This document shows, piece by piece, positions 9,505 through 50,848 of a stretch of DNA of 64,000 bases. Under the pieces are notes generated by a model that was not told the origin of the DNA, did not search any database, and saw only the letters and a list, made by a program, of their open reading frames with translations. Every line of letters starts with the position of its first letter. Position 1 is the first letter of the stretch. The position numbers were made by a program, and so were the translations under genes. The stretch covers positions 62,001 to 126,000 of the IMG/VR virus record IMGVR_UViG_3300007513_000004. The stretch is one strand, 5' to 3'.

Positions 9505-10035
9505 ATGATTAAAACAGCAGGTAGTATGTTTGACAAAAAGTCTCCCGAAGACAGAGACGCTATGGAGGCTCTTCTTGAGCAGCTAGATAGAGAAGAGACC
9601 GAAGAGGATTTGACTCACCTTCAAGATACCATTAACAAAATTGAAGAGTCATTAAAAATAATTCGTGAAAGAAATTTCTCTGAAATGTCTGACGAAGAAT
9701 TGCAAGAAGTTGCAGAAGTTGTTGCCAACTTAGACAAGTTCAAGAACGAAATGAATATACTAACTGACCAATACCTGGGGCAAGGAGCCTTAGCGGAAAT
9801 AGACTTGCCGGATGATGTATATCAAGACATCAAGCAAGAATTCGGCCAACCTTCAGAGTATCTTGGATGGGGCGCACGAAAGCCCGGAGATCCAGAGTTT
9901 GGAATGTTTCCTCCAACAATTCCATTAGCCGAAGCATCTTTTATTAATGAATTAGCCAAGATTGCAAATGAATTAGACAATCGTGGTCTTGCGAAAGAAG
10001 CTGATGAGCTTGATAAAATTATATTAAATAAATAA
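9505..10035 (+). CDS. Acidic coiled-coil protein with C-terminal tag
   Basis: Start re-assigned to ATG 9505 (MIKTAG...), directly after the upstream stop; ends EASFINELAKIANELDNRGLAKEADELDKIILNK. Confidence 0.75.
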   Translation: MIKTAGSMFDKKSPEDRDAMEALLEQLDREETEEDLTHLQDTINKIEESLKIIRERNFSEMSDEELQEVAEVVANLDKFKNEMNILTDQYLGQGALAEIDLPDDVYQDIKQEFGQPSEYLGWGARKPGDPEFGMFPPTIPLAEASFINELAKIANELDNRGLAKEADELDKIILNK

Positions 10036-10044
10036 TAATTATCA

Positions 10045-10602
10045 ATGGATAGATTCAATGATGATATTCATCCCATCGATGATTTATATTTCAATATAAA
10101 CAAACTCAAAAAAGACTTAAAAACAATTTATACAGCTGTTCAATACAAGGAAGGCGCTGTATATGGCATAAGCCTAACCAGGCCAGCAGATGGCTCAGAG
10201 GATGATGCTAGAGGCATATTTTGGACAAAGCCTAATGCCTCCGGCGCTGAAGAGCAACGAGAAAAGTATGTTGACGAATCAAGTTATACAAAGTTCTTAG
10301 AAGAAGCAAAAAATACTTATTACTTTGAAGTATATCAAACACTCTGTGAGCATTATAAAATTGGTCGAGTTAGAATTTTAAAACTAAAGCCTAGGACTTC
10401 ATTGAGTTGGCACAGAGATCCAGAGCCAAGAATTCACATCCCCATATTAACAAATCCCGGAGCACTAACTGTCGTTGAAAATTTTGCAACGAACATGCCT
10501 GCTGACGGATCAATCTATTTTATGAATACAATAAAATATCATACGGCAATCAATGGCGGCGAAGAAGATCGCATTCATTTGGTTGCAACTATACTAAGCT
10601 GA
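10045..10602 (+). CDS. Asp/Asn beta-hydroxylase-like 2OG-Fe(II) oxygenase
   Basis: LSWHRD (HxD), RIHIPILTN, HTAINGGEEDRIHLV. Confidence 0.85.
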   Translation: MDRFNDDIHPIDDLYFNINKLKKDLKTIYTAVQYKEGAVYGISLTRPADGSEDDARGIFWTKPNASGAEEQREKYVDESSYTKFLEEAKNTYYFEVYQTLCEHYKIGRVRILKLKPRTSLSWHRDPEPRIHIPILTNPGALTVVENFATNMPADGSIYFMNTIKYHTAINGGEEDRIHLVATILS

Positions 10603-10979
10603 ACATTTTTATCTTCCCAATCTTTAACCGCAGCTTTGATCGCATCTTCGGCAAGTACAGAACAATGTATCTTGACCGGCGGCAGGCAAAGCTCTTGAGC
10701 AATTACTGAATTCTTAATATCCTTTGCCTCATCTTTGCTCAATCCTTTTACCAACTCTGTTATAAAAGATGAAGATGCAATGGCCGAACCGCAACCAAAA
10801 GTTTTAAACTTGGCATCCTCGATAACACCATTGCTGTTGATCTTTAGCTGAAGCTTCATCACGTCACCACAGGCAGGCGCGCCGACGACTCCTGTTCCGA
10901 CTCCCTCTTCGTCTTTATCAAACGAACCTACATTCTTGGGATTTTCAAAATGATCTATAACCTTATCCGAATAAGACAT
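10575..10979 (-). CDS. iscU: Fe-S cluster scaffold IscU
   Basis: YSDKVIDHFENPKNVG, GAPACGDVM, KTFGCGSAIAS, LPPVKIHCS. Confidence 0.97.
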   Translation of the reverse strand: MSYSDKVIDHFENPKNVGSFDKDEEGVGTGVVGAPACGDVMKLQLKINSNGVIEDAKFKTFGCGSAIASSSFITELVKGLSKDEAKDIKNSVIAQELCLPPVKIHCSVLAEDAIKAAVKDWEDKNVQLSIVATK

Positions 10980-11565: not shown

Positions 11566-11727
11566 ATGATCACTCCGCGAATAAAAACCTATAAGAGTCA
11601 TCAGTTTGGATTGGGTGTAACTTTACATGCGGGATCAAATATGTTTAGAAATAAAGTTGTAAACTTCACCATATATTTTTTATGGTGGGAGTTTTCCGCA
11701 AGCCTTGAGCTCTCTAAACGTTTCTAG
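11566..11727 (+). CDS. Small hypothetical protein (53 aa)
   Basis: MITPRIKTYKSHQFGLGVTLHAG...WWEFSASLELSKRF; starts 1 nt after the micro-ORF stop. Confidence 0.45.
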   Translation: MITPRIKTYKSHQFGLGVTLHAGSNMFRNKVVNFTIYFLWWEFSASLELSKRF

Positions 11728-12591: not shown

Positions 12592-13014
12592 ATGTCAAAA
12601 GAAAAACTTACACCCAAAGATGTTCACAAGGCTGCGGATAAAGCAGATATAGTATGGGACGATGATGATAATTTTATGGAAGCATCGCACAAGCTGACCG
12701 AGAAGAAGCATCTCGACGATATGTCGGAAAGTGAATTATCTACAATGATTTGTAAAATAGAAAATGATCCAAAGTATTTCAAAAGACAAGCTCACTTTGC
12801 TCCTGGCAAATTTAATCTAAAAAGTAAAAATGAAAAGGGCGAGCCAGAATTTGATTTCTTTAGAAGAAATCATGATTACGAAGGTGACTACTTGGAAAAA
12901 GTAGAACGTCGCTTAAAGCGTTTGTCTAAAACTTTGAAAAAAAGAAAACATAAGCAAGAGGCGAAAGATCTAGGCTCTATGATCAAAACCTTAAAGCCAA
13001 AGAATAAAAAATGA
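12592..13014 (+). CDS. Hypothetical protein with C-terminal tag variant
   Basis: VERRLKRLSKTLKKRKHKQEAKDLGSMIKTL. Confidence 0.7.
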   Translation: MSKEKLTPKDVHKAADKADIVWDDDDNFMEASHKLTEKKHLDDMSESELSTMICKIENDPKYFKRQAHFAPGKFNLKSKNEKGEPEFDFFRRNHDYEGDYLEKVERRLKRLSKTLKKRKHKQEAKDLGSMIKTLKPKNKK

Positions 13015-16900: not shown

Positions 16901-17492
16901 TTGCAACTGGATCTACAGACGCAATAGGTTCATAAACAATTTTGCTGCCATTGCTAAAAGAGTATATCACCTTTTTCTCTGCCTCTGAGGCTGCAACAAC
17001 AGGGCCGGCAGGAGCATCGTGCCACTCTTTAGACGCCATCAAAGCATATTCCAAATCGAGATCTGCCAAAACTATAGCCTCACCCTCTGGCCACCCAGAG
17101 CCCAAGAGCCAATCCTTTATCATGGCTATGTCATTTACATCTGGGTATTGCCTATCACTGGCTTTATTAAGCTCTGTCGCTAACCATTTAATAAACTCTT
17201 TTCTATTTGCTGGAATTAAATCTTCATCTATATTATTTCGAACAAACTCTATTGCTTTTGAAGAAAAGTAAGGACCATTCGCAGCCAATTGATTAAGCAT
17301 TCTATAATACTCTCTAGGCTCTTCTCCTTCTTTCTTTGGAAACTCTTTCCTCAAAGCACCTAGGTTGATTCCAGATAAATATTTAGCATCTCTTTCTGCT
17401 GCAGTCTTTATTAAATCTTCTAAATATAAAAACTCAGTATCATGAGATTCTTTTTGCAAGTAACTTGCTAATTTTAACAAACAGTCTTTCAT
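13935..17492 (-). CDS. 1185-aa tagged protein with PcfJ-like domain and helical repeats
   Basis: N-terminal tag MKDCLLKLASYLQKESHDTEFLYLEDLIKTA; SKEWH...LGQKLGLCL...IYSIRSPNGK...KEIKGPGN resembles PcfJ-like; C-terminal KRARARKLWMLSKFA. Confidence 0.7.
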   Translation of the reverse strand: MKDCLLKLASYLQKESHDTEFLYLEDLIKTAAERDAKYLSGINLGALRKEFPKKEGEEPREYYRMLNQLAANGPYFSSKAIEFVRNNIDEDLIPANRKEFIKWLATELNKASDRQYPDVNDIAMIKDWLLGSGWPEGEAIVLADLDLEYALMASKEWHDAPAGPVVAASEAEKKVIYSFSNGSKIVYEPIASVDPVARKKLGQKLGLCLRQGLYSNDEQGEIYSIRSPNGKAGACIRIERNAVKEIKGPGNHASSVSIPNSKMIKEWLKEGGYSFSHLGQTDYNRMPPTSWKEAKEVWNKSRADFIRKGWFRGYREEFKPELINTLKFIFSEYRGKEHNNDRYLLSVLLKERVHHVYSNEFAKHLDDIARDYPELYLLNNLPKTYSSTAFSEAHEEAVDNLTEMRPNKIIDYLNPKHNWRGKVFDDNIMDMIKKREETAVHKIVGMSEKILLDDRSLGWNSNESGGNDWMIMSLFKNSYILKKYPDLAESIAENFGGLDAHSGSPYSFPEIVKGAVDSRLYRRGGIFKRIVDEAVSNIEKELEEPDSLKREDDDQPEDDLEAGSRGGGSDELPASADEFNVDPSSGAEPEQGVRTDPGSFFRLGLHMTKEYKHLTDSVAKNIVDNFDGTKHMQVVPEWNRIVRLKGVSDETKKRIANLYLNDTLSSRYGSRYGSNYLRNRLFYKNPLFLETTIRAIKSTDLFRTYAGRRDVERNSQVSRKKENPERYGHGTMTLPDVRGNINSWSIFSFFPRLIKETEGLVPDELTHDMREAIVDVAKKEDLKDDYATSAFLRKATSRKNFPELYKFIIKNTLQDRWRSLFSSLQKLNEERHPTRHLQMHVLGNMIWDLKHSVRMLHLIRKHDLHSELEDLPKFIRLFGKVNYTLAVKLKEYIKNTIENNLNPDNYNDQVLKHIGVLRMYINFGWHKPNSSYSEKLSRAIEEVSKSLFPAIKEIYEKELEEKKMSLWNIFGPRADVDKLLAKYYYNDPDYPESLVFKDEEFIEFLKEELTKLGGENPKAKEEVFAEFIYGFMYWSISTFNEMGEEAAIQEADVENYIEQMKNIWPKRTGLGYDEFFKKGFSLRDQWERTSYDGPWKPVPYDEEEVEQQLSKDYMSEYYEDLNEPELDMEEPDVQRVLEQEPQEEKLGVSEESREDTVWRSEPLDDSEEEKRARARKLWMLSKFAI

Positions 17493-17500
17493 CTAAACCT

Positions 17501-18514
17501 CTAGATATAATCTTGCAAATCTTCATAGCCTTGACCATAGCGTTTTTCCTCAAGCCTTTCTAGATCACCAGAGGTTCCTACTGGCTCTTCTTTTTCATAA
17601 GAGGAGGTATCGCCGTATAAGGGCACCTCTTCTGGAACGGAAAAGCTTTCGTCTTCAAAAAGCTGTCTTTGATCATCTGGAATAGAGTCTAAAAACTCTT
17701 CCCACTCTTCATAGATAGTGCTCATTGAACCACTTAAGTTTGGAAGGTCTGTTTTTATTTTATTTAATAAATCTTCAAACTCCAAATCTTCTAATGACTC
17801 AAGATTTGGTTCCCGGTACTCAACCCATTCAGAAAACTTTTTAGCGATTTCATCCCTTACCTCTAATACCTCACCTCTTCCTGGACGCTCTGTTTGACGA
17901 TTTAAATCTTCATTTTGATAATCCTGCAAAGAAATAAGATTATTATCAAAATCATGATGGCCTTCGGGAGTTAATCCCGATGCTGCCCACAAAACCTCTG
18001 AAGCTTCATCCATATTTAAGTCCTCCAAAGAAGCTAATCCGTCATCCATTAATTGCGCAAATTGCTTTTCTAGATCGGAAAAACCAAGCTCAAAGATAGA
18101 CTCTCTAAAGTCTGTATCGTAATTCCAATCAACAAAGTTTTCAGAATATTCTTCGGCAAGAGTGTTTAAAGCCTCTCTTTTTAGCTTTTCTTTTAATTCA
18201 TTTCCATCATCTAAGATTGAAATATTTGCTAGCTTTAGAACTTCATAGCTTTCTTTTCTAAAATTATTCTTTTTAAGAAAAGAACTAAGCTTTGTCAACC
18301 TAGCCTTTGGGCAGGAAGCTTCATTAACTCTTACTTCAAGATTGGGAGCCTCTTCATCTTTTAAGTCAAACTTGTCGGTTATATCCCTTGCCTCATCTTC
18401 TACAAAGTCTTCTAAAAAATCCTCTGCAAAATCCTCTGCAAAATCCTCCAAGTTATCTTCTAGTGCATTAATTTTTTCTAATTTATCATACATTTTGCAC
18501 TCATATTGCACCAT
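17501..18514 (-). CDS. Highly acidic protein with internal tag
   Basis: VNEASCPKARLTKLSSFLKKNNFRKESYEVLKLAN embedded in a D/E-rich sequence. Confidence 0.75.
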   Translation of the reverse strand: MVQYECKMYDKLEKINALEDNLEDFAEDFAEDFLEDFVEDEARDITDKFDLKDEEAPNLEVRVNEASCPKARLTKLSSFLKKNNFRKESYEVLKLANISILDDGNELKEKLKREALNTLAEEYSENFVDWNYDTDFRESIFELGFSDLEKQFAQLMDDGLASLEDLNMDEASEVLWAASGLTPEGHHDFDNNLISLQDYQNEDLNRQTERPGRGEVLEVRDEIAKKFSEWVEYREPNLESLEDLEFEDLLNKIKTDLPNLSGSMSTIYEEWEEFLDSIPDDQRQLFEDESFSVPEEVPLYGDTSSYEKEEPVGTSGDLERLEEKRYGQGYEDLQDYI

Positions 18515-19167
18515 TAATCGTCTAAAAGATCTTCAAATCGATTTACATATTTGTAAGAAGCATTTACGGTTAATTCTCCAGAAGTATTTCCTATATTTTC
18601 CAATGTTTGCGTTACGTTTACTCCGCCTCGGCCACTATATCGTCCGCCAACATCCTCTGGGTCTTCTGGATCCTCAGGGTCTAGAGGTTCGGGATCAGGG
18701 CATGGTGGGCAAGGGCCAGAATGATCTAGGTTGTTCACAAGAGCCTTTAGGCTGTCTAGCCCTTGATGCATAGAGAGAAGATTTGATGTAACTTTTTCAT
18801 GAATTTCTTCATCTTCAATTACCGGCTGCGGACCTGCCATGCCAACAAGGGGCGGCTCAGCAGCGGCACCCGGCCGATGCAGTGCCTGAAAAACCACCTC
18901 TCCCAAATCATCTATATCTTGTATGGCTGCCAATATAGCTGCAATATCACTAGTTGTTTCTGAAGATGTTCCACCTTTATCCGTTAAATCATCTGGCTCC
19001 GTACCTGAGTCTGGCTCCGTACCTGAGTCTGGCTCATCTGGAAATATTTTAGTCTCCTCACCTTCTGCTGTTTTGCTTATAATCATATCCACAGTATTTG
19101 CCTCTGCAGTCATGCCTGCTCTGTCAAGTTTATCTGCCAACCATATTAATTCTATTTTTGCATTCAT
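18514..19167 (-). CDS. Acidic, low-complexity tagged protein
   Basis: MNAKIELIWLADKLDRAGMTAEANTVDMIISKTA; EPDSGT repeats; PCPPCP. Confidence 0.75.
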   Translation of the reverse strand: MNAKIELIWLADKLDRAGMTAEANTVDMIISKTAEGEETKIFPDEPDSGTEPDSGTEPDDLTDKGGTSSETTSDIAAILAAIQDIDDLGEVVFQALHRPGAAAEPPLVGMAGPQPVIEDEEIHEKVTSNLLSMHQGLDSLKALVNNLDHSGPCPPCPDPEPLDPEDPEDPEDVGGRYSGRGGVNVTQTLENIGNTSGELTVNASYKYVNRFEDLLDD

Positions 19168-19188: not shown

Positions 19189-19725
19189 TTAATCTTTTTT
19201 ATTATCAACATGATCAGAGATAGCCTCTACATGCATGCCTAAAAATCCAAAATCATCTGAAAGATCAGAATCTAATTTTTGCGAAAGAACCCCAGCCTTA
19301 TATGCTATATTATGCGAAAGCTCAAGAGCTTTTTTCAACTCATCTTGTGTTGCAGATTTTTCTTTAAGAATTTCCTTTTCCAAACCAAGTAGTTCATCAG
19401 TTTCCCCAAGAGCCTCCAAGGCTATATCTATAGAGTCCTCATCTACTCCGTCATTCTTTACTTCTTCTCTAAGCATTTTAAAAGCCTTAACCGCTCCAGG
19501 ACATATGTCAAAATGCTCCGTACTTTCTCCATTAAACTCTACTTGCTCGTCTTCTTCTGGAGCATCTTCTTCTGGAGCATCTTCCTCTGGAGCGTCCCCA
19601 CTTACGCCTTCCAGGCCATTAACCAACTTTGTTAATGTAGCCATAATATCATCAACCTTTCCAGCTTCTTTGATCAAGCCTCTTTGGTCTAATTCATTTG
19701 CTAAATTTATAAGTTTTTCTAACAT
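19189..19725 (-). CDS. Acidic tagged protein
   Basis: MLEKLINLANELDQRGLIKEAGKVDDIM; EEDAP repeats; FDICPGA. Confidence 0.8.
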   Translation of the reverse strand: MLEKLINLANELDQRGLIKEAGKVDDIMATLTKLVNGLEGVSGDAPEEDAPEEDAPEEDEQVEFNGESTEHFDICPGAVKAFKMLREEVKNDGVDEDSIDIALEALGETDELLGLEKEILKEKSATQDELKKALELSHNIAYKAGVLSQKLDSDLSDDFGFLGMHVEAISDHVDNKKD

Positions 19726-27589: not shown

Positions 27590-30154
27590 CTATTGATGCA
27601 ACTCATACAGCCCAACGTCAATTATCACCGGCTCTCGCGAACCCGGCCTTTGCATTAAATTATTTGCATGCACATCCGACCAGTTAATTCCATTATCTTT
27701 TAATGTTTGAAGAAGAGCAAATAAACTTTCTGTTTCTGGCATATACTTTTCTGAAAACAAGAATCCTTCAGGAGATTCTGTGTAAATAGTTTGCTCTCTC
27801 TCCTTCTCTAATGCCTCTAATCTTCTGCGATTTCTACCTGCGCTATACCCCTGAGGATTATCTTCTAACATACCCTGTAATGCTCCAATAGATTGGTCTA
27901 CGCCTTCTGTTGAATAATATTTTGGAATAGGTCTTTCCGAAGCTTGGAAATATGAATTTATATTATTTTGAATTTCATCTGCAATTTGAGAAATGAAATC
28001 ATTTTCACCAAGCATAAATAAATTAGAAATATTTAGTAATTTATTATTTACAAAAGCAGATACCCCATCTGTTTGCACATCCCTAACAAGGATTGCCCTC
28101 TCCAGCTCTCTCTTTATACCCTCCTGCTCTGTAACAAAAGATCTATATATATCTTCTTCTTCCTCATTCTTTGATGTATTCCTTAAGGTTTCGGTGGCTG
28201 AATTGAAAGAGCGAGAGATTGCATCATGAATAAACTCTTCATTTTTAAACAAATCTCCTGATTCCCTATTTCTCTTTGTCCGCAAGACAGAATCCATATG
28301 ACCTCCGAAAGGTTCCAGGACTTCCATTATAATTATAGTGTCAAACATATCTTCAACTATTTTATAAATTTTTGGCAAATGCTTTCTTTGTTCTTCCGGA
28401 ACTTCAATTTCTGAAATCTTCTTCCAAATATCCGGCTCCATATTGCTGCTTGTAACCACCTTCGCTATTGCTCTATTGCCGTCATGCAGAACCTCATAGA
28501 TATTACCTTCTGCTGTTCTGGCCCCTTCGCCTCGTCGCTCTGCTTCTGTCCCTGCTATATACTTTATTATTTCCACTCCATTTCTTTTTAACACCTCTTC
28601 GCTTGGAAATCTGCGTCTCTCTACCCTGGTTTGCACCGGGATTGTAGCGTCTGGATCAACGGGGGTGGTTATCCCTGGCCCTATAGACATGGTTGAACCT
28701 GCCTGATCATCCGAATTAGTTGTCGCTAATTTTAAAATCTCTTCTAAAAAAGAAGCTTCTTGTGTAAAACCATTTTTCTTTAAATATTCATTTAAATTAT
28801 AAAATTTATTATCGATACTTGCAAAAGCGCTTGTCTGCTGAGGCATATCCACTCCCGGCGTCTGACCAGCATAAGGTATTCCGTCTTGCAAAAACCTATC
28901 AGCCTCTCTGTTTCTTCTCTTTGTAAGGCCGCGCATTTTTCTTCTTTTACCATCTGATCCGGTTGAAGTTTGAGGGCCATTTCGAATAGCCTTTTCTGCC
29001 CCCATATAATCACCCTCATTAAGGGGTCCTAATATATTATATTTTTTTGGACCACCCCTTCCGGTATTAAATGCAAAAGATGACATTGCATCAAACATAC
29101 TTTGGGTTATCGGAACTTTTATCTGACCTTTCCATGGAGACTCATGTTTTTTTACATCCTCTTTATAAAGACTCCAGGCCTGATCTCTTGTCATCTCCCC
29201 TCGCCCTTTTAGATACTTTGAAAACCTAGGCTTCTCTCTGGTTCTTACCAAATGTCCAATTCCAATTGTTGCTCGACCTTTAGCTTCCCCATATGAAGAA
29301 ATCGGCTCTCCCGTTGCATCATCATAAACATTTCCACGATAACTTTCTTTATCTGCCATCTCTTTCATTAAAGCCTCTGATGTTTCCATGCTACTTGCAG
29401 ACCCTATATTTGTAGCCCTTGATGCCTGAGCGGTGCCCGCCGGGGCAGGCAGAGGAGGCATGGCATCAGAGGGCAGAGGAGGCATGGCATCAGAGGGCAG
29501 AGGAGGCATAGCTCCAGAGCCTTGGCCCGGCGGGGTCGCTGCCCCTTGGCCTGCAGGCACCGCAGCAATGCTTTCCAGCATTATTAAAGTATTTTTATCA
29601 ACTATGCCAGTTGGCTCTATTTGATTGTTTGTCTGAAACTGAATAACAGCATTTTTTGTTTCTTCTCCATAATTTCCATTTACGTATCTTCCTGCTGAAA
29701 TATACCCATGTTTTACCAAAAGACTTTGAATCTTTGAGACAGGAGTGTTTCCAGCAACATCTTTGCTTCCAACCTGAAGTGTGCTAGAACCAGATCTGAT
29801 GGACGCCAGTTGATCCACCGGCGGAGGAAGATCTGGAGAAGAGACAGCTTGCGGTTCTGCCGACAAAGGCTCTGAGCGAGCCACCTCTTCGGCTCTCTGC
29901 AAGGCCTCCGCCTCTCCGCCTGCAGCAGCCGCAGCTTCTTCTGCAGCTTTTTGATCTTGCAAAGTCTTTTTAACCCACTCTAAATCGAACCCAAAAAACT
30001 CTGCATATGCCTCAGGGTCCGTTTCTGGATCAGGAATATCCGTAGATCCGCCACCGGTGCCAGAAATATTCCTAATAGCCCGCATCATCTCAGCTTCTTT
30101 TTCAAAACCCTTTTCTGTAAGAAACTTTTTTAATGTAAAAAGCCGATCATGCAC
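27590..30154 (-). CDS. Tagged multidomain protein: PG-binding domain + GH24 lysozyme + protein-kinase-like domain
   Basis: IQSLLVKHGY...G.YGEETKNAVIQFQ (PG_binding_1); KESYRGNVYDD...TIGIGH...FDAMSSFAFNTG...GLTKRRNREA (GH24); AIAKV...IIMEVL...DVHANNLM...IIDVG (kinase); tag at the N-terminus and between lysozyme and kinase. Confidence 0.85.
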   Translation of the reverse strand: MHDRLFTLKKFLTEKGFEKEAEMMRAIRNISGTGGGSTDIPDPETDPEAYAEFFGFDLEWVKKTLQDQKAAEEAAAAAGGEAEALQRAEEVARSEPLSAEPQAVSSPDLPPPVDQLASIRSGSSTLQVGSKDVAGNTPVSKIQSLLVKHGYISAGRYVNGNYGEETKNAVIQFQTNNQIEPTGIVDKNTLIMLESIAAVPAGQGAATPPGQGSGAMPPLPSDAMPPLPSDAMPPLPAPAGTAQASRATNIGSASSMETSEALMKEMADKESYRGNVYDDATGEPISSYGEAKGRATIGIGHLVRTREKPRFSKYLKGRGEMTRDQAWSLYKEDVKKHESPWKGQIKVPITQSMFDAMSSFAFNTGRGGPKKYNILGPLNEGDYMGAEKAIRNGPQTSTGSDGKRRKMRGLTKRRNREADRFLQDGIPYAGQTPGVDMPQQTSAFASIDNKFYNLNEYLKKNGFTQEASFLEEILKLATTNSDDQAGSTMSIGPGITTPVDPDATIPVQTRVERRRFPSEEVLKRNGVEIIKYIAGTEAERRGEGARTAEGNIYEVLHDGNRAIAKVVTSSNMEPDIWKKISEIEVPEEQRKHLPKIYKIVEDMFDTIIIMEVLEPFGGHMDSVLRTKRNRESGDLFKNEEFIHDAISRSFNSATETLRNTSKNEEEEDIYRSFVTEQEGIKRELERAILVRDVQTDGVSAFVNNKLLNISNLFMLGENDFISQIADEIQNNINSYFQASERPIPKYYSTEGVDQSIGALQGMLEDNPQGYSAGRNRRRLEALEKEREQTIYTESPEGFLFSEKYMPETESLFALLQTLKDNGINWSDVHANNLMQRPGSREPVIIDVGLYELHQ

Positions 30155-33595: not shown

Positions 33596-33817
33596 ATGAA
33601 TAATGAATTAATTAAACTAGCAAATCATTTAGACAAAAAGGGCTTTCACAAAGAAGCTGATTTCTTAGATTCAATTATAAAAACCGCTTTAAATACCTCG
33701 TATCCAGAAGGCGGAGGAACCCGGTCTAATATACGCAAACTATGGGAACGAGTAAATGCTATCGAAAAACAGCTTGCTCTTTTAGATGAATCAACCCATA
33801 CACATCCGGATCCATAA
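33596..33817 (+). CDS. 73-aa tagged micro-protein
   Basis: MNNELIKLANHLDKKGFHKEADFLDSIIKTA plus ~42-aa cargo; cleanest tag copy. Confidence 0.8.
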   Translation: MNNELIKLANHLDKKGFHKEADFLDSIIKTALNTSYPEGGGTRSNIRKLWERVNAIEKQLALLDESTHTHPDP

Positions 33818-34677: not shown

Positions 34678-36015
34678 CTAACTAATCTGATACCCAGCAT
34701 TCTTCAGCGCCGAGTTATGGCACATAATTCCAGGCGTTGATCCAGACAGCTCTGTCCAATCCTCTATTTCTCCACTTTCATCTGCTCCAAAAATATATGT
34801 TTCCGGACCAGACATCGGCACCTCATTGGCTGACACTACAACGTGTGTGTGACCATCCAATGGTTCGCTTAACTCATAAAGGGCAGCATCTCCTCTGAAA
34901 TTATCCAAGGTTTTTATACGCTTTGCCGTTTTGCTTTTTGACAATTGCTCTGCATCCAAAAGATTCTGCCCCCGACCATGATAGGGTTTTTCGGTCATAG
35001 TGTTTAAAGAAACACCCCTATCTGCCCAAGGCTTATCCCAAGGCTTATCGTCAGAACTTATTTGGCTTACCATTTGACTTACCATTTCATCCATTCTTCC
35101 CTCTGGATGCGATCCGGGACGAGCTTGAACATCAGACGTTGGGTCAAGATCATCTTTTAGCTGCTGTACTTCATCGCCTATTCTTTCGTCAACCTCTGCA
35201 GCAATCTCCTCAGGATCTTTGGAGCTTCCGGAGTCAGCAGCGCCTTCTCCGAGGCCATACCAATCCCAATTAGCCTCACCCTCTTCGTCGTCATCCCACG
35301 AGGGTGCATCTACTTCTTTTGTTCTTTTCGCAACCAATGTAGCCTCAAGAACTGCCGAGCCTTCCCAGACACAGCCGGAGGCCACATCCCAACCATAATA
35401 CCACATACTACTGTGCCTAAAGCTATACTGATAAGGGCAGATCTCAATGCCAGAATATTTCATAGCAACTTTTGCCCAATCAATAGTCTTCCCCCAAGAA
35501 CTATCTGGAACCGAATACTCTCTCTCAAAGGCGACAAACTCTTGCTCATTCGTTATCATAAGCATTCTGCTTTCATCAACCTTGAAAGAATAAACATAAC
35601 CACCAATCCATTGTGGCATCTCATAAGTCAGCCAGCTAATCCACTCATTTCCGCATGCATACCAAATGCCCGAAGGTTTTGGTCCCTTTTGTTGCGCAGG
35701 AAAGTTTGGAATTCTAGTCAACTCTTCTGCCGCCATAGTTATTCTGTTATTTTGATTATCCCCTATTAACTCTGTAAGCTGTGTATAATTTGCCTCTTTA
35801 TCCTTTTTTTCAGGAATATTTACCTTCAGATCTTGAGTCTCTTCTTTCAGCTTCGCTAGTTCTTCCGGAATCCTTCTTGCCATTCCTAATTTATCAAAGT
35901 GGTATGCCAACTTATCGCAGACATCAGCCTCTCTAATCATTCCTTTTTGATCAAACTTATTAGACAGATCTATCAACTCATTGATATTTAATTTTGAAAT
36001 GGCAGCTTTATCCAT
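34678..36015 (-). CDS. Tagged two-domain protein (KPxGIW...IDW...WDVASG domain plus C-terminal phage domain)
   Basis: Tag NELIDLSNKFDQKGMIREADVCDKLA; acidic linker between two globular domains. Confidence 0.75.
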   Translation of the reverse strand: MDKAAISKLNINELIDLSNKFDQKGMIREADVCDKLAYHFDKLGMARRIPEELAKLKEETQDLKVNIPEKKDKEANYTQLTELIGDNQNNRITMAAEELTRIPNFPAQQKGPKPSGIWYACGNEWISWLTYEMPQWIGGYVYSFKVDESRMLMITNEQEFVAFEREYSVPDSSWGKTIDWAKVAMKYSGIEICPYQYSFRHSSMWYYGWDVASGCVWEGSAVLEATLVAKRTKEVDAPSWDDDEEGEANWDWYGLGEGAADSGSSKDPEEIAAEVDERIGDEVQQLKDDLDPTSDVQARPGSHPEGRMDEMVSQMVSQISSDDKPWDKPWADRGVSLNTMTEKPYHGRGQNLLDAEQLSKSKTAKRIKTLDNFRGDAALYELSEPLDGHTHVVVSANEVPMSGPETYIFGADESGEIEDWTELSGSTPGIMCHNSALKNAGYQIS

Positions 36016-40409: not shown

Positions 40410-40505
40410 TAAACAAACCTATTTACCTTCTAACTACGTTTGAAAATTAGTAAGGTTACTTAAATAGGGATTATACTTTTTAAAAGTACAAATAAAGTTA
40501 TAATG

Positions 40506-41887: not shown

Positions 41888-41952
41888 TGTATCTCCAAGC
41901 TAACAATATTCATAATATTATTAGAAATTACTTCGTTCATCTAAATGTATGA

Positions 41953-47189: not shown

Positions 47190-47756
47190 TTAATAGTAGA
47201 CTTGATTCATCTGCTCTATTCGCCTTTTAATACGTCTTTTGAGCTTTTTAATTTTACGAGTATACATATCTCTTTTAAGCTTGCTAACCTTATCCAGCAA
47301 GGTTACTCCATCCAAATGATCTAATTCATGCTGAACAACAACAGCTTCGGCCCCAAAGAGTTCCTCTTCCTTTTCTTCGCCAAGCGGAGTTACATACTGA
47401 ACCTTTATTGACTCGCTTCTTTCGACATCAAGTATAAATCCCGGCAGGGATAGGCACCCCTCCTGAAAGGTTATGGTTTCTTCCGATTTGCTAACAACTT
47501 TTGGATTTACCATCATCAACGGATTCGATCCAGCATCTGCAACAAGAAGTCTTCTTGAGTCTCCAACCTGAATGCCGGCAAGCCCAACCCCATTTAGCTC
47601 ATACATCTTACTCAACATACCCTTCATGTGGGCCTCTAACTCTTCTCCCAAATCATCCTCATGAACATCATCGCTCACATCTCTAAGGCTAGAACTGGGT
47701 GCAAAAACAATATTTACTTCACTCATAATAATTTCTCCTTTCATCATTTGTATCAA
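47190..47756 (-). CDS. def: Peptide deformylase
   Basis: GVGLAGIQ, EGCLS, QHELDHLDG; likely start at MSEVNI (47726). Confidence 0.95.
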   Translation of the reverse strand: MIQMMKGEIIMSEVNIVFAPSSSLRDVSDDVHEDDLGEELEAHMKGMLSKMYELNGVGLAGIQVGDSRRLLVADAGSNPLMMVNPKVVSKSEETITFQEGCLSLPGFILDVERSESIKVQYVTPLGEEKEEELFGAEAVVVQHELDHLDGVTLLDKVSKLKRDMYTRKIKKLKRRIKRRIEQMNQVYY

Positions 47757-47970
47757 TAATCCATCCAGCTATTGAAGAAGCAGTATCTACAAATAGGAAT
47801 GGAAATATAGCGTGTATAAGACATACTACTCCAGCGAACAAAAGAGATATGCTAAAAAATATTGCAACAACACAATGTTTTATATATGACTCTCCAACGC
47901 TATTAGGGTGTTCTGTAAATAATCTTTTAAAAGATTTAAAAACATCTTTTAAAAATTCTTTCATTATCAA
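47719..47970 (-). CDS. DUF6356-like small membrane protein
   Basis: FTEHPNSVGESYIKH...IHAIFPFLF..TAS. Confidence 0.75.
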   Translation of the reverse strand: MIMKEFLKDVFKSFKRLFTEHPNSVGESYIKHCVVAIFFSISLLFAGVVCLIHAIFPFLFVDTASSIAGWIIDTNDERRNYYE

Positions 47971-48497
47971 TCCTCATATATAGATCCTTCGAAATCGTAT
48001 CTGGCCTCTTTCCCATTAAAGAACCCTATTCTCGCATCCAACTCTACTCCGTCAACTTCGTTGATTCCCACGCCAAGTAATTCATTCGAATAAACAGGGC
48101 TGGTTTCCTCTGTGGTTGACACTGTTATATGAGGAATGCTGTTTGAAGAGGCTACCCCAGCAACCATAACGGCCTGGCCTCGATCATCTTCATTGTATCC
48201 AATAATTTTTAACTTAACAATCTTTCCATCTATTGGCAAAGCTAGAACCTCTTCTTCCGATGGTTTAAACTTTATAGTCATATGGTGCATAAAATGCTTA
48301 GAATGAAGCTCCTTCTGAACTACGGTTCCCCACCAATTTTCCAACATTTCTTTACCAGATGGTGTTAAAAATGCCGCAGTATATAAGGCTTTCTTTTTCT
48401 TTTTTGCATATTTTATAATTTCTTCTACAGACTTTAAATATGCAGAGCCACCTTCTTTTTCTATTTTATCTTTTAATTCCTCTAATGCTTTAATCAT
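47967..48497 (-). CDS. 2H phosphoesterase (cyclic phosphodiesterase-like), with divergent tag
   Basis: Two HxT motifs, HHMTIKF and PHITVS; N-terminal MIKALEELKDKIEKEGG...EEIIKYA. Confidence 0.8.
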   Translation of the reverse strand: MIKALEELKDKIEKEGGSAYLKSVEEIIKYAKKKKKALYTAAFLTPSGKEMLENWWGTVVQKELHSKHFMHHMTIKFKPSEEEVLALPIDGKIVKLKIIGYNEDDRGQAVMVAGVASSNSIPHITVSTTEETSPVYSNELLGVGINEVDGVELDARIGFFNGKEARYDFEGSIYED

Positions 48498-50848
48498 ATT
48501 ATCTCCATATTATCTAAATAATCTGCCTCTTCAATAAGGCCTCTCTCATCTAACTCGTTTGCTACTGTAATTAATTTTTTTAATATACTCACTTTATCAT
48601 TCGACGCCTTTACTCGAAGCGATTCTTTGGGTTTAGCGCTAATGCTTACTCTATAAATAGTTACTTTTGAATGAAGATCTGGACCATAAACGTTTTCTAG
48701 TATATTATTTACATCATTTATATATTTCAAATTATCGTCATAAAATTTTATTGAACTTACAGAATCTTGCTGTGCAATTTGTCCAATTATATGCGCCTTA
48801 TATTTTCCACTAGAAATATTGGTTGGCTTTGTAAATATAGATATAGGAAGCTTAAGGCCAACGCTTGTGAGTCGATCCATTATACCCTCTGCCATACCTT
48901 CTCTTGTTTCTCTTGCTGTCAATATAACGGCGTTATCACTATGAGTCTTGTATGTGTTTAAAATCTCTTCATTCGGTATGGTCCCCAATGTTTTAGGGCT
49001 TTGATAAAACACAGCGTCTCCAGCTACAACCGCTTGCTCGGGAACATACTTGCCCCTTAAATCAAATGCTTTCAAATTTTTTGATGAAAAATATTTTTTC
49101 AACATCGGAATTCCTATTGGGCTTCCGCTTTCGTCGGAAAGAACAAACACTACCTGCCTATCCTTTCCAAGCATAGGTAAATCCACAATCCTCTTTATAA
49201 GCCTAAGGTTTCCCACCTCTTGCCTATATGAGTCTGCCAACCCTTGTATTTCTTTTCCCTTTTTATCTTTTTTGATTAATTCTACATGATTTTCATTAGC
49301 TCTTTGCACAAAAGAAATAGCCTTATGAAACATATTTGGAAGGTCCATGTCTACAGAGGTTGCATCACCCTCCTCGTTGGTCTCCACTATAGTGTGCCAC
49401 TCAGGAGTCCAGAACAGTGTGTCATCCATATCAAAAATATACACTTCTCCACTAAGCGGTGGAATAGGTATATTTAGTGGATTTTCTATTTTATCACCAT
49501 TCAAAGAATGCGCTTTTTTTATATGATTATTTAAAAAATTAGTCTCAGAAAATTTTCCAAGTTTGCTTAATTCTAAAGAAAGCTTAATCAATTTTTCTGT
49601 TATATCAGAACTGGCCTCAGATATTCCTTCAGTATTCTCTGGATTTTTTTCAAAATAAGCATCAACCTCAGCGCTCCTAATGGCTTCGCCCATCTCTGGC
49701 CCAGGCTTCATACCTCCCGCTATAAGATCTCGCGCAGATACAACCGGTGGGGCAGATGCAAAGTTTATAAACTTATTAAAGTCCTGCCCTATAGCCCCTC
49801 CAAAGTCCATTATTGCCTCGTTGCTCATAATTGTCTTTGAAGCTTTTTTCATTCGTATCAACTCTCTCTTTAGTCCGATTAAACTTTCGGCATTTAATTT
49901 AGTTAAATTTAAGAGAAATTTTACAGAATCTTTTATATCATTTCCATATTTCTTTTGAAACAAAACATTAGCTACATCGCTACTATTGTTTTCTTGAAGA
50001 ATCGTAGCAAGTTGAACAGCAACATTTCTGCTTGAAGATATTGCTTTAGAAACTTTTAATCCTGGCAATATTTGTGGAAACAAATCAAAATCTTTTAACA
50101 TATTAATATAATGAGATGGAGACTTTGATGTTTTAATTCCTTTTTTTACTTCATCCTGAATTCTTTCATCAGAAACCGCTGCTTCACTATTCTCTGTAAG
50201 TGAATTATTACTTCTAATTGCATTAGCAGTTTCTTCATCAACCTCTCCGCCCATTCTTCCTGCAAATCTAAAGGCTCTAAGGATTCTTAAACGATCTTCT
50301 CCGAATCTTTCATCAGGATCTCCAACGGTTCTTATAACCTCATTCTTAATGTCGTCTATTCCACCAACATAGTCAACGACCTCTCCCGCAACTCCATCCT
50401 CCCTCTCTTTGCGTGTTGGAATTCTATAAAACAAAGCATTTATGGTGAGATCTCGACGCATTGCGTCATCTTTTATTGATAACGGATTCTCTTTTGTGGA
50501 AAGGGTGGCCTCACCACCCATCCTGGTTCCGCGCTCTACTCGATATGGAGCAAATTCATACTCGTTTCCATCATAAGCTATCATCCTTGCTACTGCGAAT
50601 GACTTTTCGCCCTGAACCCCTATGCGCTTAACGTACGGGCTTAAAATTCTAATGACATCTTCCGGAGTTGCGTTTGTTGCTATATCATAATCCTTTGGAG
50701 ACTTTCCAAGAATGGTGTCCCTTACTGCTCCTCCAGCAATGTACATTTCAAATCCAGCAGAAGCCATTACATCCCTTAGTTGATAAAGGCTTTCAGGAAT
50801 TTCCATAGGAATTTCCATTATAATTGGATTATCAAAAGCTTCAGACAT
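48494..50848 (-). CDS. cca: Class II tRNA nucleotidyltransferase (CCA/poly(A) polymerase family) fused via a tag to an RNA-repair-type HAD phosphatase
   Basis: GGAVRD..LG..PKDYDIAT, RRDLTINAL, EDRLRILRAFRF, ERI..E; then FDMDDTLF, ILTAR, K, FYDD (HAD); internal and C-terminal tags. Confidence 0.85.
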   Translation of the reverse strand: MSEAFDNPIIMEIPMEIPESLYQLRDVMASAGFEMYIAGGAVRDTILGKSPKDYDIATNATPEDVIRILSPYVKRIGVQGEKSFAVARMIAYDGNEYEFAPYRVERGTRMGGEATLSTKENPLSIKDDAMRRDLTINALFYRIPTRKEREDGVAGEVVDYVGGIDDIKNEVIRTVGDPDERFGEDRLRILRAFRFAGRMGGEVDEETANAIRSNNSLTENSEAAVSDERIQDEVKKGIKTSKSPSHYINMLKDFDLFPQILPGLKVSKAISSSRNVAVQLATILQENNSSDVANVLFQKKYGNDIKDSVKFLLNLTKLNAESLIGLKRELIRMKKASKTIMSNEAIMDFGGAIGQDFNKFINFASAPPVVSARDLIAGGMKPGPEMGEAIRSAEVDAYFEKNPENTEGISEASSDITEKLIKLSLELSKLGKFSETNFLNNHIKKAHSLNGDKIENPLNIPIPPLSGEVYIFDMDDTLFWTPEWHTIVETNEEGDATSVDMDLPNMFHKAISFVQRANENHVELIKKDKKGKEIQGLADSYRQEVGNLRLIKRIVDLPMLGKDRQVVFVLSDESGSPIGIPMLKKYFSSKNLKAFDLRGKYVPEQAVVAGDAVFYQSPKTLGTIPNEEILNTYKTHSDNAVILTARETREGMAEGIMDRLTSVGLKLPISIFTKPTNISSGKYKAHIIGQIAQQDSVSSIKFYDDNLKYINDVNNILENVYGPDLHSKVTIYRVSISAKPKESLRVKASNDKVSILKKLITVANELDERGLIEEADYLDNMEII

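What the first reader, a model, noticed from the sequence alone, without database searches (positions are those of the whole stretch)
9931..49618. Tags are bracketed by x-A-S upstream and K-x-A downstream: putative Ala-specific maturation-protease sites
Seen: five of the six internal or C-terminal tags are closely preceded by an A-S dipeptide: LAEA/S (9505 ORF), VNEA/S (17501), SAFA/S (27590), ISEA/S and RVKA/S (48494). The ~12901 variant is the exception. TVNA/S also occurs near the end of the 18514 ORF. N-terminal and internal tags end in IKTA, EKIA, SKTA, LKLA, IKKA, IKYA, RKFA or VKIS, after which the cargo begins. The 9505 ORF begins simply MIKTA. Inference: cleavage after Ala (often [ILV]-x-x-A) on both sides would excise the tag and free the cargo. 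This is analogous to Glu-specific head-protein processing in T4 and phiKZ, but with a different P1 residue.
Basis: partly seen in the sequence, partly recalled or inferred. Interest (0 to 1): 0.72.

Follow-up and report, generated by a model that had tools for sequence, protein, structure and literature searches.

The report
Ala-specific cleavage sites flanking capsid tags
In an uncultured marine jumbo phage, a 32-residue helical tag carried by dozens of proteins is bordered by Ala-Ser and Lys-x-Ala motifs, which also sit at the key processing positions of related phages' head protease/scaffold and capsid proteins, so they are probably maturation-protease cut sites of a herpesvirus-like kind, though no cleavage has been shown.

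Summary
The window is part of a 223-kb IMG/VR jumbo myophage contig. It carries a 32-aa tag (consensus MINELIKLANxLDxKGLxKEADYLDxhIKKxA), predicted to be a helix-turn-helix hairpin. The contig has 24 solid copies, and 3,033 protein clusters in metagenomes match.

- **Upstream A-S.** Five of six internal or C-terminal tags in the window have A-S just upstream. Across 79 non-redundant internal tags the figure is 37%, against a 4% background (p=2e-20). AS outnumbers SA 29:7, and the codons vary.
- **Downstream Ala.** The K-K-(x)-A end is present in 71% of tags followed by cargo, but in only 21% of C-terminal tags.
- **Same motifs in head proteins.** The contig lacks the head genes, so I used relatives. 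Their prohead protease (a homologue of phage G gp19) is fused to a scaffold. Its only two conserved A-S dipeptides are at the end of the protease domain (LLKxxA|S, 100%) and 30-38 aa before the C-terminus (K[IV]A|S). This is the layout of herpesvirus UL26 R and M sites.
- **Capsid protein.** Its only two A-S dipeptides (GEINA|S, IVKYA|S) lie in a short N-terminal extension.

Cleavage itself is inferred, not shown. The closest analogy is herpesvirus assemblin rather than T4 or phiKZ. Verdict: a new variant of a known kind.

The parts
9943..10026 (+). C-terminal tag of the acidic, scaffold-like ORF 9439/9505-10035. It is preceded by PLAEA|S (Ala codon 9934-9936).
   Evidence: HMM E=6e-13. A|S position. 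The G001 orthologue keeps PIAQA|S.
18215..18307 (-). Internal tag of ORF 17501-18514. Upstream is RVNEA|S (Ala codon 18317-18319). The tag ends in LKLA|N (Ala codon 18227-18229).
   Evidence: HMM E=6e-6.
19063..19158 (-). N-terminal tag of ORF 18514-19167, ending ISKTA|E (Ala codon 19066-19068). The same ORF has TVNA|S near its C-terminus (18559-18561).
   Evidence: HMM E=7e-11.
19630..19725 (-). N-terminal tag of ORF 19189-19725. It ends ...IMATLT, with no K-x-A.
   Evidence: HMM E=3e-12.
28718..28816 (-). Degenerate internal tag in the 854-aa PG-binding/lysozyme protein (ORF 27590-30154). Upstream is SAFA|S (Ala codon 28820-28822). The tag ends ILKLA|T (28724-28726).
   Evidence: Weak HMM match (iE=0.04). 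Domains. Positions.
30062..30154 (-). Degenerate N-terminal tag of the same 854-aa protein.
   Evidence: Weak HMM match; sequence.
33596..33688 (+). N-terminal tag of the 73-aa ORF 33596-33817, ending IIKTA|L (Ala codon 33686-33688).
   Evidence: HMM E=2e-17.
35890..35988 (-). Near-N-terminal tag of ORF 34678-36015, whose cargo includes an ArdC-N-like domain.
   Evidence: HMM E=8e-12. PF08401 E=4.5e-5, above the curated cutoff.
48506..48586 (-). C-terminal tag of the 784-aa CCA-adding-enzyme polyprotein (ORF 48494-50848), preceded by LRVKA|S (Ala codon 48605-48607).
   Evidence: HMM E=6e-11.
49502..49600 (-). Degenerate internal tag of the same polyprotein. It lies between the CCA-adding domain and a domain with a HAD-like DxDxT motif. 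Upstream is ISEA|S (Ala codon 49613-49615). The tag ends HIKKA|H (49511-49513).
   Evidence: Weak HMM match plus the sequence; positions.
17400..17492 (-). Degenerate N-terminal tag of the 1185-aa ORF 13935-17492, ending LIKTA|A.
   Evidence: Sequence. Below the HMM threshold.
6017..6109 (-). Degenerate N-terminal tag of the 893-aa ORF 3428-6109, ending LEKIA|Q.
   Evidence: Weak HMM match.
12901..12999 (+). Basic, tag-like C-terminal variant in ORF 12592-13014.
   Evidence: Weak HMM match (iE=0.1).

Best explanation
The window belongs to an uncultured marine jumbo myophage. Its capsid protein and head protease are related to those of Bacillus phage G.

**The tag (inferred role).** A portable 32-residue alpha-hairpin, most often at the very N-terminus, marks at least 28 otherwise unrelated proteins. 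They include a lysozyme, a CCA-adding enzyme, an ArdC-like protein and many tiny proteins. I infer that the tag directs them into the assembling head.

**The flanking motifs (shown as sequence features; function inferred).** The motifs at the tag borders are most likely recognition sites of the phage's prohead serine protease, which cuts after Ala.
- On the N-side of internal and C-terminal tags the site would be h-x-x-A|S. Cutting there leaves a Ser one or two residues ahead of where native N-terminal tags have their Met.
- On the C-side of tags the site would be h-h-K-K-(x)-A|x, exactly where tag conservation ends.
- Cutting would detach cargo from the anchored tag and split multi-enzyme polyproteins.

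**Parallel with herpesvirus (inferred from relatives).** The same enzyme would free itself from its fused scaffold at [KR]-x-x-A|S. It would remove a tail of about 31-38 aa from the scaffold at K-[IV]-A|S, and trim the N-terminus of the capsid protein. This repeats the herpesvirus UL26 scheme of release site, maturation site and capsid-binding tail.

**Shown:** the motifs, their statistics, their placement, and the homologies. **Inferred:** packaging, cleavage, and which enzyme does it.
For: **Flank statistics**
- AS lies upstream of 29 of 79 internal tags, against a 4.1% background (p=2e-20). AS:SA is 29:7, and the Ser is at -1 or -2 in 19 of 29.
- The codons are synonymous-variable.
- Ala at tag position 31/32 occurs in 163 of 230 tags with cargo but in 4 of 19 C-terminal tags (p=2.5e-5).
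- Conservation stops right after that Ala.

**Tag structure**
- AF2 predicts helix 2-14, a turn, then helix 18-31, with pLDDT 94.6.

**Protease identity**
- The 1108-aa ORF of G001 matches phage G gp19 (E=4e-30). A published annotation calls gp19 a head maturation protease (PMC12484599).
- The ORF also matches phrog_18299, 'head maturation protease' (E=1.5e-11).
- It lies about 5 kb upstream of the capsid gene in G001, G002 and L068.
- hhalign places its invariant H125 and S176 on HK97 gp4 His65 and Ser114. The score is weak.
- ESM-Atlas neighbours include S77 and S78 clusters.

**Sites in the polyprotein**
- Among 70-111 homologues, the only conserved AS dipeptides are at 239|240 (100%) and 1077|1078. 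At the second site K-[IV]-A is 100% conserved, the following residue is S in 69%, and the tail is 30-38 aa.
- Phage G gp19 has ILEKVA|S and LLKIA|S. Phage G gp21 has EEIKKTA|K ahead of SLGG.

**Capsid protein**
- Its only two AS dipeptides are at 13|14 and 27|28, and both are invariant.
- GE[IF]NA|S is kept in Lu11 and, with Val for the Ala (GEFNV|S), in GR7B.
- The NCBIfam HK97-fold core starts at residue 51.
- Phage G gp27 starts at the equivalent of residue 44.
- The capsid protein of PaBG, a relative of Lu11, loses about 20% of its mass on maturation (PMC7412058).

**Herpesvirus reference**
- Pseudorabies virus has R site YLQA-T and M site VQA-S, and the M-site cut removes a 37-aa capsid-binding tail (PMC4498786).
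Against: - There is no proteomic or biochemical evidence of any cleavage or packaging.
- The window's own contig (CheckV 67% complete) lacks the protease, scaffold and capsid genes. That evidence comes from relatives (G001, G002, G005, L068).
- 63% of internal tags have no A-S. One homologous family has ...PA|L...AA|L or ...VS|L instead.
- The residue after the tag-end Ala is variable.
- The AF2 model puts the tag-end Ala inside helix 2, where it could simply be a helical-face residue.
- [KR]-x-A is frequent in the polyprotein, with 17 conserved instances.
- The AS at 239|240 sits inside a highly conserved stretch, so its invariance alone proves little.
- Pfam S21, S77 and S78 models do not detect the protease.
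- The structure prediction of the protease domain failed (pLDDT 42).
- The complex prediction of tag plus capsid protein gave no answer.
Confidence: 0.5

Rival explanations
1. There is no cleavage. A-S and K-K-x-A are structural or linker features of the hairpin module, such as a small-residue linker with a helix start on one side and a helix end on the other. Tags stay attached to their proteins.
For: - The AF2 model has helix 2 running through the terminal Ala.
- Upstream flanks are rich in G, S, A and P, like linkers.
- 63% of internal tags lack AS.
- The residue after the tag-end Ala is variable.
- K-x-A is a common helical tripeptide.
Against: - The AS:SA ratio of 29:7 is not a composition effect.
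- The terminal Ala is largely lost when nothing follows the tag (21% against 71%). That is unexpected for a fold-intrinsic residue.
- The same motifs recur at the protease/scaffold boundary, near the scaffold C-terminus and in the capsid N-terminal extension, none of which contain tags.
Confidence: 0.28
2. The sites are cut, but by another protease. Candidates are the secreted trypsin-fold peptidase encoded in the window (19765-20553), the phage ClpP of relatives, or a host enzyme such as signal peptidase I (A-x-A).
For: - A Trypsin_2 peptidase (E=1e-11) lies next to three tagged ORFs in the window and is conserved in G001.
- S1 peptidases with small S1 pockets cut after Ala. This is general knowledge of alpha-lytic and elastase-type enzymes, not tested here.
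- Several sites read A-x-A|S (AEA|S, AQA|S).
- ClpP is present in G001 and G003.
Against: - The trypsin-like protein has a signal-peptide-like N-terminus and sits among exported lipoprotein-like genes, whereas heads assemble in the cytoplasm.
- The G001 ClpP is flanked by a methylase and a nucleotidyltransferase, not by head genes.
- Tagged proteins have no signal peptides.
- The motifs at the prohead protease's own domain boundary point to self-processing.
Confidence: 0.07
3. The tag is not a capsid-targeting signal. It could be a docking or oligomerisation module for some other phage structure or a regulator. The resemblance of its flanks to head-protein motifs would then be coincidental or reflect a shared but different function.
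For: - No test supports binding to the capsid protein (one search gave no answer).
- Cultured relatives by capsid protein (phage G, Lu11, GR7B, Tunturi_5, Rctr197k) lack the tag entirely.
- Foldseek finds only generic hairpins.
Against: - The cargo list fits injected proteins: PG-binding lysozyme, an ArdC-N-like domain, a CCA-adding enzyme, and many tiny basic or acidic peptides.
- The architecture copies the T4 internal-protein loci. There is a tandem array of genes with a conserved N-terminal peptide and hypervariable remainder. The T4 comparison rests on established knowledge.
- One C-terminally tagged protein is an acidic helical protein of scaffold-like composition.
Confidence: 0.15

Closest known systems
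Herpesvirus assemblin / UL26 protease-scaffold polyprotein (MEROPS S21, clan SH)
   Same: - Both have an N-terminal serine protease fused to a scaffold.
- Both have a conserved Ala|Ser at the end of the protease domain. Here it is LLK-x-x-A|S. Pseudorabies virus has YLQA|T, and other herpesviruses have Y-V/L-K/Q-A|S (from my own knowledge).
- Both have a second Ala|Ser about 30-38 aa from the C-terminus. Here it is VK[IV]A|S. Pseudorabies virus has VQA|S with a 37-aa tail that binds the capsid protein (PMC4498786).
- P1 is Ala and P1' is mostly Ser.
   Different: - The Pfam S21 model does not match.
- The best, though weak, alignment is to HK97 gp4, with a His/Ser pair.
- The host is bacterial.
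- The tail after the putative M-like site is not the tag.
- The phage additionally uses a portable hairpin tag on dozens of non-scaffold cargo proteins, which herpesviruses do not.
T4 capsid targeting sequence (CTS) of internal proteins, with gp21 prohead protease
   Same: - A short conserved N-terminal peptide is shared by unrelated, hypervariable proteins encoded in arrays.
- The peptide ends at a protease consensus site.
- The cargo includes anti-defence proteins that are injected.
   Different: - The T4 CTS is about 10 aa and is cut after L/I-x-E. Here the tag is a 32-aa folded hairpin and the putative P1 is Ala.
- Here tags also occur internally and at C-termini, bracketed on both sides.
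- The Pfam S77 model does not match.
phiKZ / SPN3US propeptides cut by gp175 / gp245 (A/S/G-x-E motif)
   Same: - Both are jumbo myophages with many packaged ejection proteins.
- Both have multiple cleavages, and the protease removes its own C-terminal part (PMC10052503).
   Different: - There the P1 is Glu, and the long propeptides (20-254 aa) are not a shared portable motif.
- The capsid and protease lineage is different. Here both are phage-G-like.
P22 scaffolding protein C-terminal helix-turn-helix coat-binding domain
   Same: - Both are alpha-hairpins of about 30 aa.
- In P22 the hairpin alone suffices to load fused cargo into procapsids (established knowledge).
- In this phage an acidic helical protein carries the tag at its C-terminus (ORF 9439-10035).
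   Different: - There is no detectable sequence or Foldseek relationship.
- The P22 scaffold is not proteolysed.
- Here the tag sits mostly at N-termini of non-scaffold proteins.
HK97 gp4 prohead protease (Pfam S78)
   Same: - Gene position is the same, between portal and capsid.
- hhalign superposes H125 and S176 on the catalytic His65 and Ser114.
   Different: - HK97 cuts gp5 after Lys103 (FNK|SLG).
- The Pfam S78 model does not match.
- Here the protease is fused to a scaffold of about 850 aa.

Membership tests
Herpesvirus-type protease-scaffold polyprotein (UL26-like organisation) | N-terminal serine protease domain fused in one ORF to a scaffold protein. | tested here: met
   In relatives G001, G002, G005 and L068, residues 31-240 match phage G gp19 (protease) and residues ~1017-1071 match phage G gp21. 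The window's contig does not contain the gene.
Herpesvirus-type protease-scaffold polyprotein (UL26-like organisation) | Conserved Ala|Ser release site at the C-terminal end of the protease domain. | tested here: inconclusive
   The motif [IV]LL[KR]C[ILF]A-S-L is invariant in 111 of 111 homologues, and phage G gp19 has KVA-S. Cleavage was not shown.
Herpesvirus-type protease-scaffold polyprotein (UL26-like organisation) | Conserved Ala|Ser maturation site about 25-40 aa from the scaffold C-terminus. | tested here: inconclusive
   K-[IV]-A is 100% conserved. The next residue is S in 69%, otherwise R, T or A. The tail is 30-38 aa. Cleavage was not shown.
Herpesvirus-type protease-scaffold polyprotein (UL26-like organisation) | Sequence membership of Peptidase_S21 (assemblin). 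| tested here: not met
   PF00716 gave no match in G000, but that contig lacks the protease gene and the control genomes gave no hit either. hmmscan of the G001 protein found no peptidase family.
HK97/T4-type prohead serine protease (Pfam S78/S77; MEROPS clan SH) | Match to the family model. | tested here: not met
   PF04586 and PF03420 gave no match in G000-G005. However, phrog_18299 'head maturation protease' matched at E=1.5e-11, and ESM-Atlas neighbours include S77/S78 clusters at 0.91-0.93.
HK97/T4-type prohead serine protease (Pfam S78/S77; MEROPS clan SH) | Catalytic His and Ser in the family's spacing and motif context. | tested here: inconclusive
   Invariant H125 (CRDHESS) and S176 (YGSMGT) align with HK97 gp4 His65 and Ser114. 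The support is weak: hhalign probability 1.2%, E=0.043 against a single sequence. The AF2 model was unusable.
HK97/T4-type prohead serine protease (Pfam S78/S77; MEROPS clan SH) | Gene located in the head module between portal/terminase and the major capsid protein. | tested here: met
   In L068 the order is terminase, unidentified ORFs of 566, 553 and 755 aa (no portal was identified), protease/scaffold (1139 aa), four ORFs, a decoration-like gene, then the capsid gene. G001 and G002 have the same protease-to-capsid spacing.
Capsid targeting sequence plus maturation cleavage (T4 CTS / phiKZ propeptide type) | A conserved terminal peptide shared by many otherwise unrelated phage proteins. | tested here: met
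   There are 24 copies in the contig, 8-16 in each related contig, and 3,033 clusters in 1.84e9 proteins. Most are at residue 1.
Capsid targeting sequence plus maturation cleavage (T4 CTS / phiKZ propeptide type) | The peptide ends in the prohead protease's cleavage consensus. | tested here: inconclusive
   K-K-(x)-A lies at the point where conservation ends, and the Ala depends on downstream cargo. Similar K-x-A(|S) motifs occur in the protease/scaffold and capsid proteins. The protease's specificity has not been measured.
Capsid targeting sequence plus maturation cleavage (T4 CTS / phiKZ propeptide type) | Tagged proteins are physically packaged in the head and the tag is removed. | not testable with these tools
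   There is no cultured member: tblastn against 50,697 phage records found no tag. Complex prediction gave no answer.
P22-scaffold-like helix-turn-helix coat-binding domain | A helix-turn-helix of about 30-40 aa. | tested here: met
   AF2 predicts H2-14, a turn, then H18-31, with pLDDT 94.6.
P22-scaffold-like helix-turn-helix coat-binding domain | Binds the coat protein. | tested here: inconclusive
   Complex prediction of capsid protein plus tag gave the verdict 'no answer'.

The most novel reading that the evidence does not exclude
A large, abundant and entirely uncultured clade of marine jumbo phages with a phage-G-like capsid uses one portable 32-aa alpha-hairpin as a universal capsid-loading tag. 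The tag sits on dozens of cargo proteins and multi-enzyme polyproteins. The cargo is released by a prohead protease with herpesvirus-like h-x-x-Ala|Ser specificity. That protease is itself encoded as a UL26-like protease-scaffold-tail polyprotein with R- and M-like sites. If true, this would be the closest sequence-level parallel yet between phage and herpesvirus capsid maturation. It would also be a natural, programmable packaging-and-release system.
Probability: 0.4. Interest if true: 0.82.

Novelty: new variant of a known kind. Interest (0 to 1): 0.7.

Why it matters
- **Targeting code.** If the motifs are cleavage sites, they define both the targeting code and the release code by which a widespread group of ocean jumbo phages loads enzymes into the capsid for co-injection. 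The cargo seen here includes a lysozyme, a tRNA CCA-adding enzyme with a HAD-like module, and an ArdC-like anti-restriction domain.
- **Annotation.** Thousands of 'hypothetical' metagenomic proteins could be annotated as virion cargo from sequence alone.
- **Evolution.** An Ala|Ser-specific, scaffold-fused prohead protease in phages would strengthen the link between tailed-phage and herpesvirus maturation at the level of substrate specificity and polyprotein layout, not only fold.
- **Application.** A 32-aa hairpin plus a short cut site is an attractive natural module for loading and releasing cargo in HK97-fold capsids.
- **Testability.** Phage G is cultured and shares the protease and scaffold motifs, so part of the idea can be tested now.

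Tried and rejected
- **Pfam and NCBIfam on tagged proteins:** no family covers the tag.
- **The search for related loci with the tag alignment or the tag alone:** I replaced it with a degenerate DNA pattern.
- **Pfam S77, S78, S21 and S49 searches of the contig and relatives:** all negative.
- **ClpP in G001 and G003:** rejected as the head protease because its neighbours are a DNA methylase and a nucleotidyltransferase.
- **AF2 of the protease domain:** pLDDT 41.6, because the alignment was shallow at 68-100% identity. It was unusable, so no fold search was run. Phage G gp19 could not be added to the alignment.
- **PDB sequence-profile search with the protease profile:** only a spurious designed repeat protein.
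- **Complex prediction of capsid protein plus tag:** 'no answer'.
- **Foldseek of the tag model:** only generic hairpins, all with E>1.
- **The idea that G001's TAA|S, at the point where phage G gp27 begins, is a conserved capsid cleavage site:** rejected for the marine clade. Most members read ATAP[SG] there, although Lu11 has ATA|S.
- **The idea that the capsid N-terminal extension exists only in tag-bearing phages:** rejected. Lu11, GR7B and Rctr197k have an extension but no tags.
- **The idea that A-S reflects a DNA-level motif:** rejected because the codons vary.
- **L068 as the missing head module of the window's phage:** no nucleotide overlap, and the decoration-like protein is only 39% identical. 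It is a relative, not the same phage.

Full report
**What the window is.**
The 64-kb window is bases 62,001-126,000 of a 223,402-bp linear IMG/VR viral contig (CheckV 67% complete, 39% GC).
- PHROG and Pfam searches identify tail fibres, a baseplate wedge, a tail sheath, a PG-binding lysozyme, topoisomerase IA, a CCA-adding enzyme, helicases and ribonucleotide reductase. It is a jumbo myophage.
- No head genes are present. The contig ends at a decoration-like gene that in relatives lies next to the capsid gene.

**The tag.**
- A 32-33-aa motif with consensus M-I-N-E-LIKLANxLDxKGLxKEADYLDxhIKK(x)A occurs 24 times in the contig at E<1e-8. Fifteen of these are in a tandem array of small genes just upstream of the window.
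- In the window there are seven solid and six degenerate copies.
- AF2 predicts a confident helix-turn-helix hairpin: H2-14, H18-31, pLDDT 94.6. Foldseek returns only generic hairpins.
- No Pfam, NCBIfam or PHROG family covers it.
- A profile search of 1.84 billion representatives finds 3,033 clusters at E<=1e-3. Most have the tag at residue 1, and many have two or three tags. All those looked up are unnamed or 'hypothetical', and one cluster member carries a Tara Oceans sample label.
- A degenerate DNA pattern found related viral contigs. These are G001 (316,664 bp, 94% complete), G002, G003 and G005, which are independent relatives. G004 is the same phage as the window.
- The tag is absent from 50,697 GenBank phage records by tblastn. 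It is also absent from phage G, Lu11, GR7B, Tunturi_5 and Rctr197k by profile search, with G001 as a working positive control.

**Check of the observation: upstream A-S.**
- In the window, five of six internal or C-terminal tags have A-S within 10 residues upstream. The basic variant at 12901-12999 does not.
- AS is not over-represented in these proteins overall.
- In a de-duplicated set of 263 tags from five phages and 150 database representatives, 29 of 79 internal or C-terminal tags lacking an initial Met have AS within 12 residues upstream. Background is 4.1% (p=2e-20).
- AS is the top dipeptide there and AS:SA is 29:7. The Ser is 1-2 residues before tag position 1 in 19 of 29 cases.
- Internal tags that begin with Met almost never have AS (1 of 20). 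This fits their being true or recent N-termini.
- Codons for A-S vary, so the constraint is on the protein.

**Check of the observation: downstream K-x-A.**
- Positions 29-30 are K/R then K. Ala is at position 31 (36%) or 32 (39%). After that, conservation ends in an acidic linker.
- Ala at 31/32 occurs in 163 of 230 tags followed by at least 15 residues, but in only 4 of 19 C-terminal tags that still extend past that position (Fisher p=2.5e-5).
- The Ala therefore tracks the presence of cargo, not the hairpin fold.

**Locating the protease and capsid protein.**
- Synteny mapping shows that the G001 region of about 20-135 kb is the part missing from the window's contig.
- The G001 ORF 34006-35028 is the major capsid protein. 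It matches phrog_2522 (E=2e-73) and the NCBIfam HK97-fold MCP model NF042927 over residues 51-335. It is 51% identical to Bacillus phage G gp27.
- A published re-annotation of phage G names gp19 as the head maturation protease (PMC12484599).
- gp19 matches the N-terminal 240 residues of a 1,108-aa ORF in G001 (39995-43321, E=4e-30). It also matches orthologues in G002, G003, G005 and L068.
- The C-terminal part of the G001 ORF resembles phage G gp21.
- The ORF hits phrog_18299, 'head maturation protease' (E=1.5e-11).
- hhalign against HK97 gp4 is statistically weak, but it superposes invariant H125 and S176 on the catalytic His65 and Ser114.
- ESM-Atlas neighbours include S77 and S78 clusters.
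- Pfam S21, S77 and S78 models do not match, and the AF2 model of the domain was unusable.
- The phage ClpP in G001 and G003 sits among unrelated genes, so I dismissed it as the head protease.

**The motifs in the head proteins.**
- Across 70-111 homologues of the protease/scaffold polyprotein, only two AS dipeptides are conserved.
  - One is [IV]LL[KR]C[ILF]A|SL at residue 239|240, at the end of the protease domain (100%).
  - The other is [STN]-[VIM]-K-[IV]-A|S-DLGG, 30-38 residues from the C-terminus. There K-x-A is 100% conserved and the next residue is S in 69%, otherwise R, T or A.
- Phage G gp19 has ILEKVA|SK and LLKIA|SE in its C-terminal tail. Phage G gp21 has EEIKKTA|K just ahead of SLGG.
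- The marine capsid proteins (1,837 homologues at E<=1e-20) carry a conserved 31-residue N-terminal segment followed by a variable linker. Phage G lacks this segment. The only two AS dipeptides of the whole protein are there, GE[IL]NA|S at 13|14 and IVKYA|S at 27|28, and both are invariant among G001, G002 and L068.
- GE[IF]NA|S is conserved in Pseudomonas phage Lu11, with GEFNV|S in Vibrio phage GR7B.
- The capsid protein of PaBG, a relative of Lu11, loses about 20% of its mass on maturation (PMC7412058).

**Interpretation.**
- The layout is protease, then Ala|Ser, then scaffold, then Ala|Ser, then a tail of about 31-38 aa. That is the layout of herpesvirus UL26, with a release site and a maturation site.
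- In pseudorabies virus the sites are YLQA|T and VQA|S, and the second cut removes a 37-aa tail that binds the capsid protein (PMC4498786).
- Known phage head proteases differ in specificity. T4 cuts after L/I-x-E. The phiKZ and SPN3US enzymes cut after A-x-E (PMC10052503). HK97 cuts after Lys103.
- I therefore read the tag flanks as sites for an Ala-specific, assemblin-like prohead protease. The sites would be h-x-x-A|S ahead of internal and C-terminal tags, and h-h-K-K-(x)-A| behind tags.
- This would release cargo from an anchored hairpin and split polyproteins. One example is ORF 48494-50848: CCA-adding enzyme, ISEA|S, tag, IKKA|, a domain with a HAD-like DxDxT motif, RVKA|S, tag. Another is ORF 27590-30154: tag, PG-binding domain and lysozyme, SAFA|S, tag, LKLA|, then an unknown domain.
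- The cargo types and the tandem array of genes with a conserved N-terminal peptide recall the T4 internal-protein loci and their capsid targeting sequence.

**Limits.**
- Nothing here shows cleavage or packaging.
- The head-gene evidence is from relatives.
- 63% of internal tags lack A-S, and one family has ...A|L or ...S|L instead.
- The residue after the tag-end Ala is variable.
- The tag-end Ala lies in helix 2 of the model.
- [KR]-x-A alone is common, with 17 conserved instances in the polyprotein.
- The AS at 239|240 lies in a strongly conserved block.
- The complex prediction of tag plus capsid protein gave no answer.
- The main rival is that the flanks are linker or helix-boundary features without cleavage. 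Lesser rivals are another protease, such as the window's secreted trypsin-fold peptidase, or a non-capsid role for the tag.

**Verdict.**
- It is a new variant of a known kind: targeting propeptides removed by a prohead protease.
- It occurs in an uncultured, abundant marine phage clade, with clear experiments available, some of them in cultured phage G.

Noticed in passing
window 48494-50848 (-): A 784-aa polyprotein. It has a CCA-adding enzyme (PolyA_pol head plus RNA-binding domain), an internal degenerate tag, a domain with a HAD-like DxDxT motif (YIFDMDDTLF), and a C-terminal tag. It looks like a packaged tRNA-repair module.
   Followed up: partly
window 34678-36015 (-): A tagged 445-aa protein with an ArdC-N-like (anti-restriction, ssDNA-binding) domain. 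PF08401 matched at E=4.5e-5, above the curated cutoff. This would fit an injected anti-defence protein.
   Followed up: partly
window 19765-21092 (-): A Trypsin_2 peptidase with a signal-peptide-like N-terminus lies next to a CPBP/Rce1-like intramembrane protease. Both are conserved in G001 and are followed by lipoprotein-like and Ig-like exported proteins (22276-25398).
   Followed up: partly
genome 53,000-62,000 (locus L004), just upstream of the window: A tandem array of about 15 small genes. Each begins with a near-identical tag and continues with an unrelated short sequence, reminiscent of the T4 internal-protein loci.
   Followed up: partly
database homologues P0323, P0327, P0337, P0350, P0392 of the protease/scaffold gene: Some homologues are 1,290-1,507 aa long and carry intein and homing-endonuclease Pfam domains (PF14890, PF05203, PF14528, PF13403). 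Inteins have therefore invaded the head protease gene in this clade.
   Followed up: no
G001 34006-35028 and its 1,837 database homologues: The capsid protein of this clade is extremely abundant and conserved in metagenomes. The 120 best hits are 84-100% identical to the G001 protein, and it is 51% identical to Bacillus phage G gp27. The clade thus appears to be a marine relative of the largest cultured phage.
   Followed up: partly
window 6334-7386, 10575-10979, 13637-13942, 47190-47756, 51187-53268: Auxiliary genes: full-length DnaJ, peptide deformylase and topoisomerase IA (all by Pfam). By eye only: an IscU-like Fe-S scaffold and a class I cytochrome c with a signal peptide.
   Followed up: partly
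window 11724-12476 and 22276-22872 (-): Two lipoprotein-like proteins with thioredoxin-type WCGxC motifs. The first has long acidic DDDDSAVDTSG repeats. Seen by eye only.
   Followed up: no
window 25554-25934 (-): A 126-aa ORF made of tandem peptide repeats of about 19 aa (SSASVAEILTVLAESAEVQ), with an R/K-rich C-terminus.
   Followed up: no
L005 16964-19438 (genome 141,964-144,438): An 824-aa protein combining a glycosyltransferase match with a weak PhuZ-like tubulin match (phrog_4733, E=6e-6).
   Followed up: no
window 9439-10035 (+): The start of this ORF is ambiguous. An internal ATG at 9505 gives a protein beginning MIKTA-G, which is a bare tag-end motif without the tag. The start site was not resolved.
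   Followed up: no
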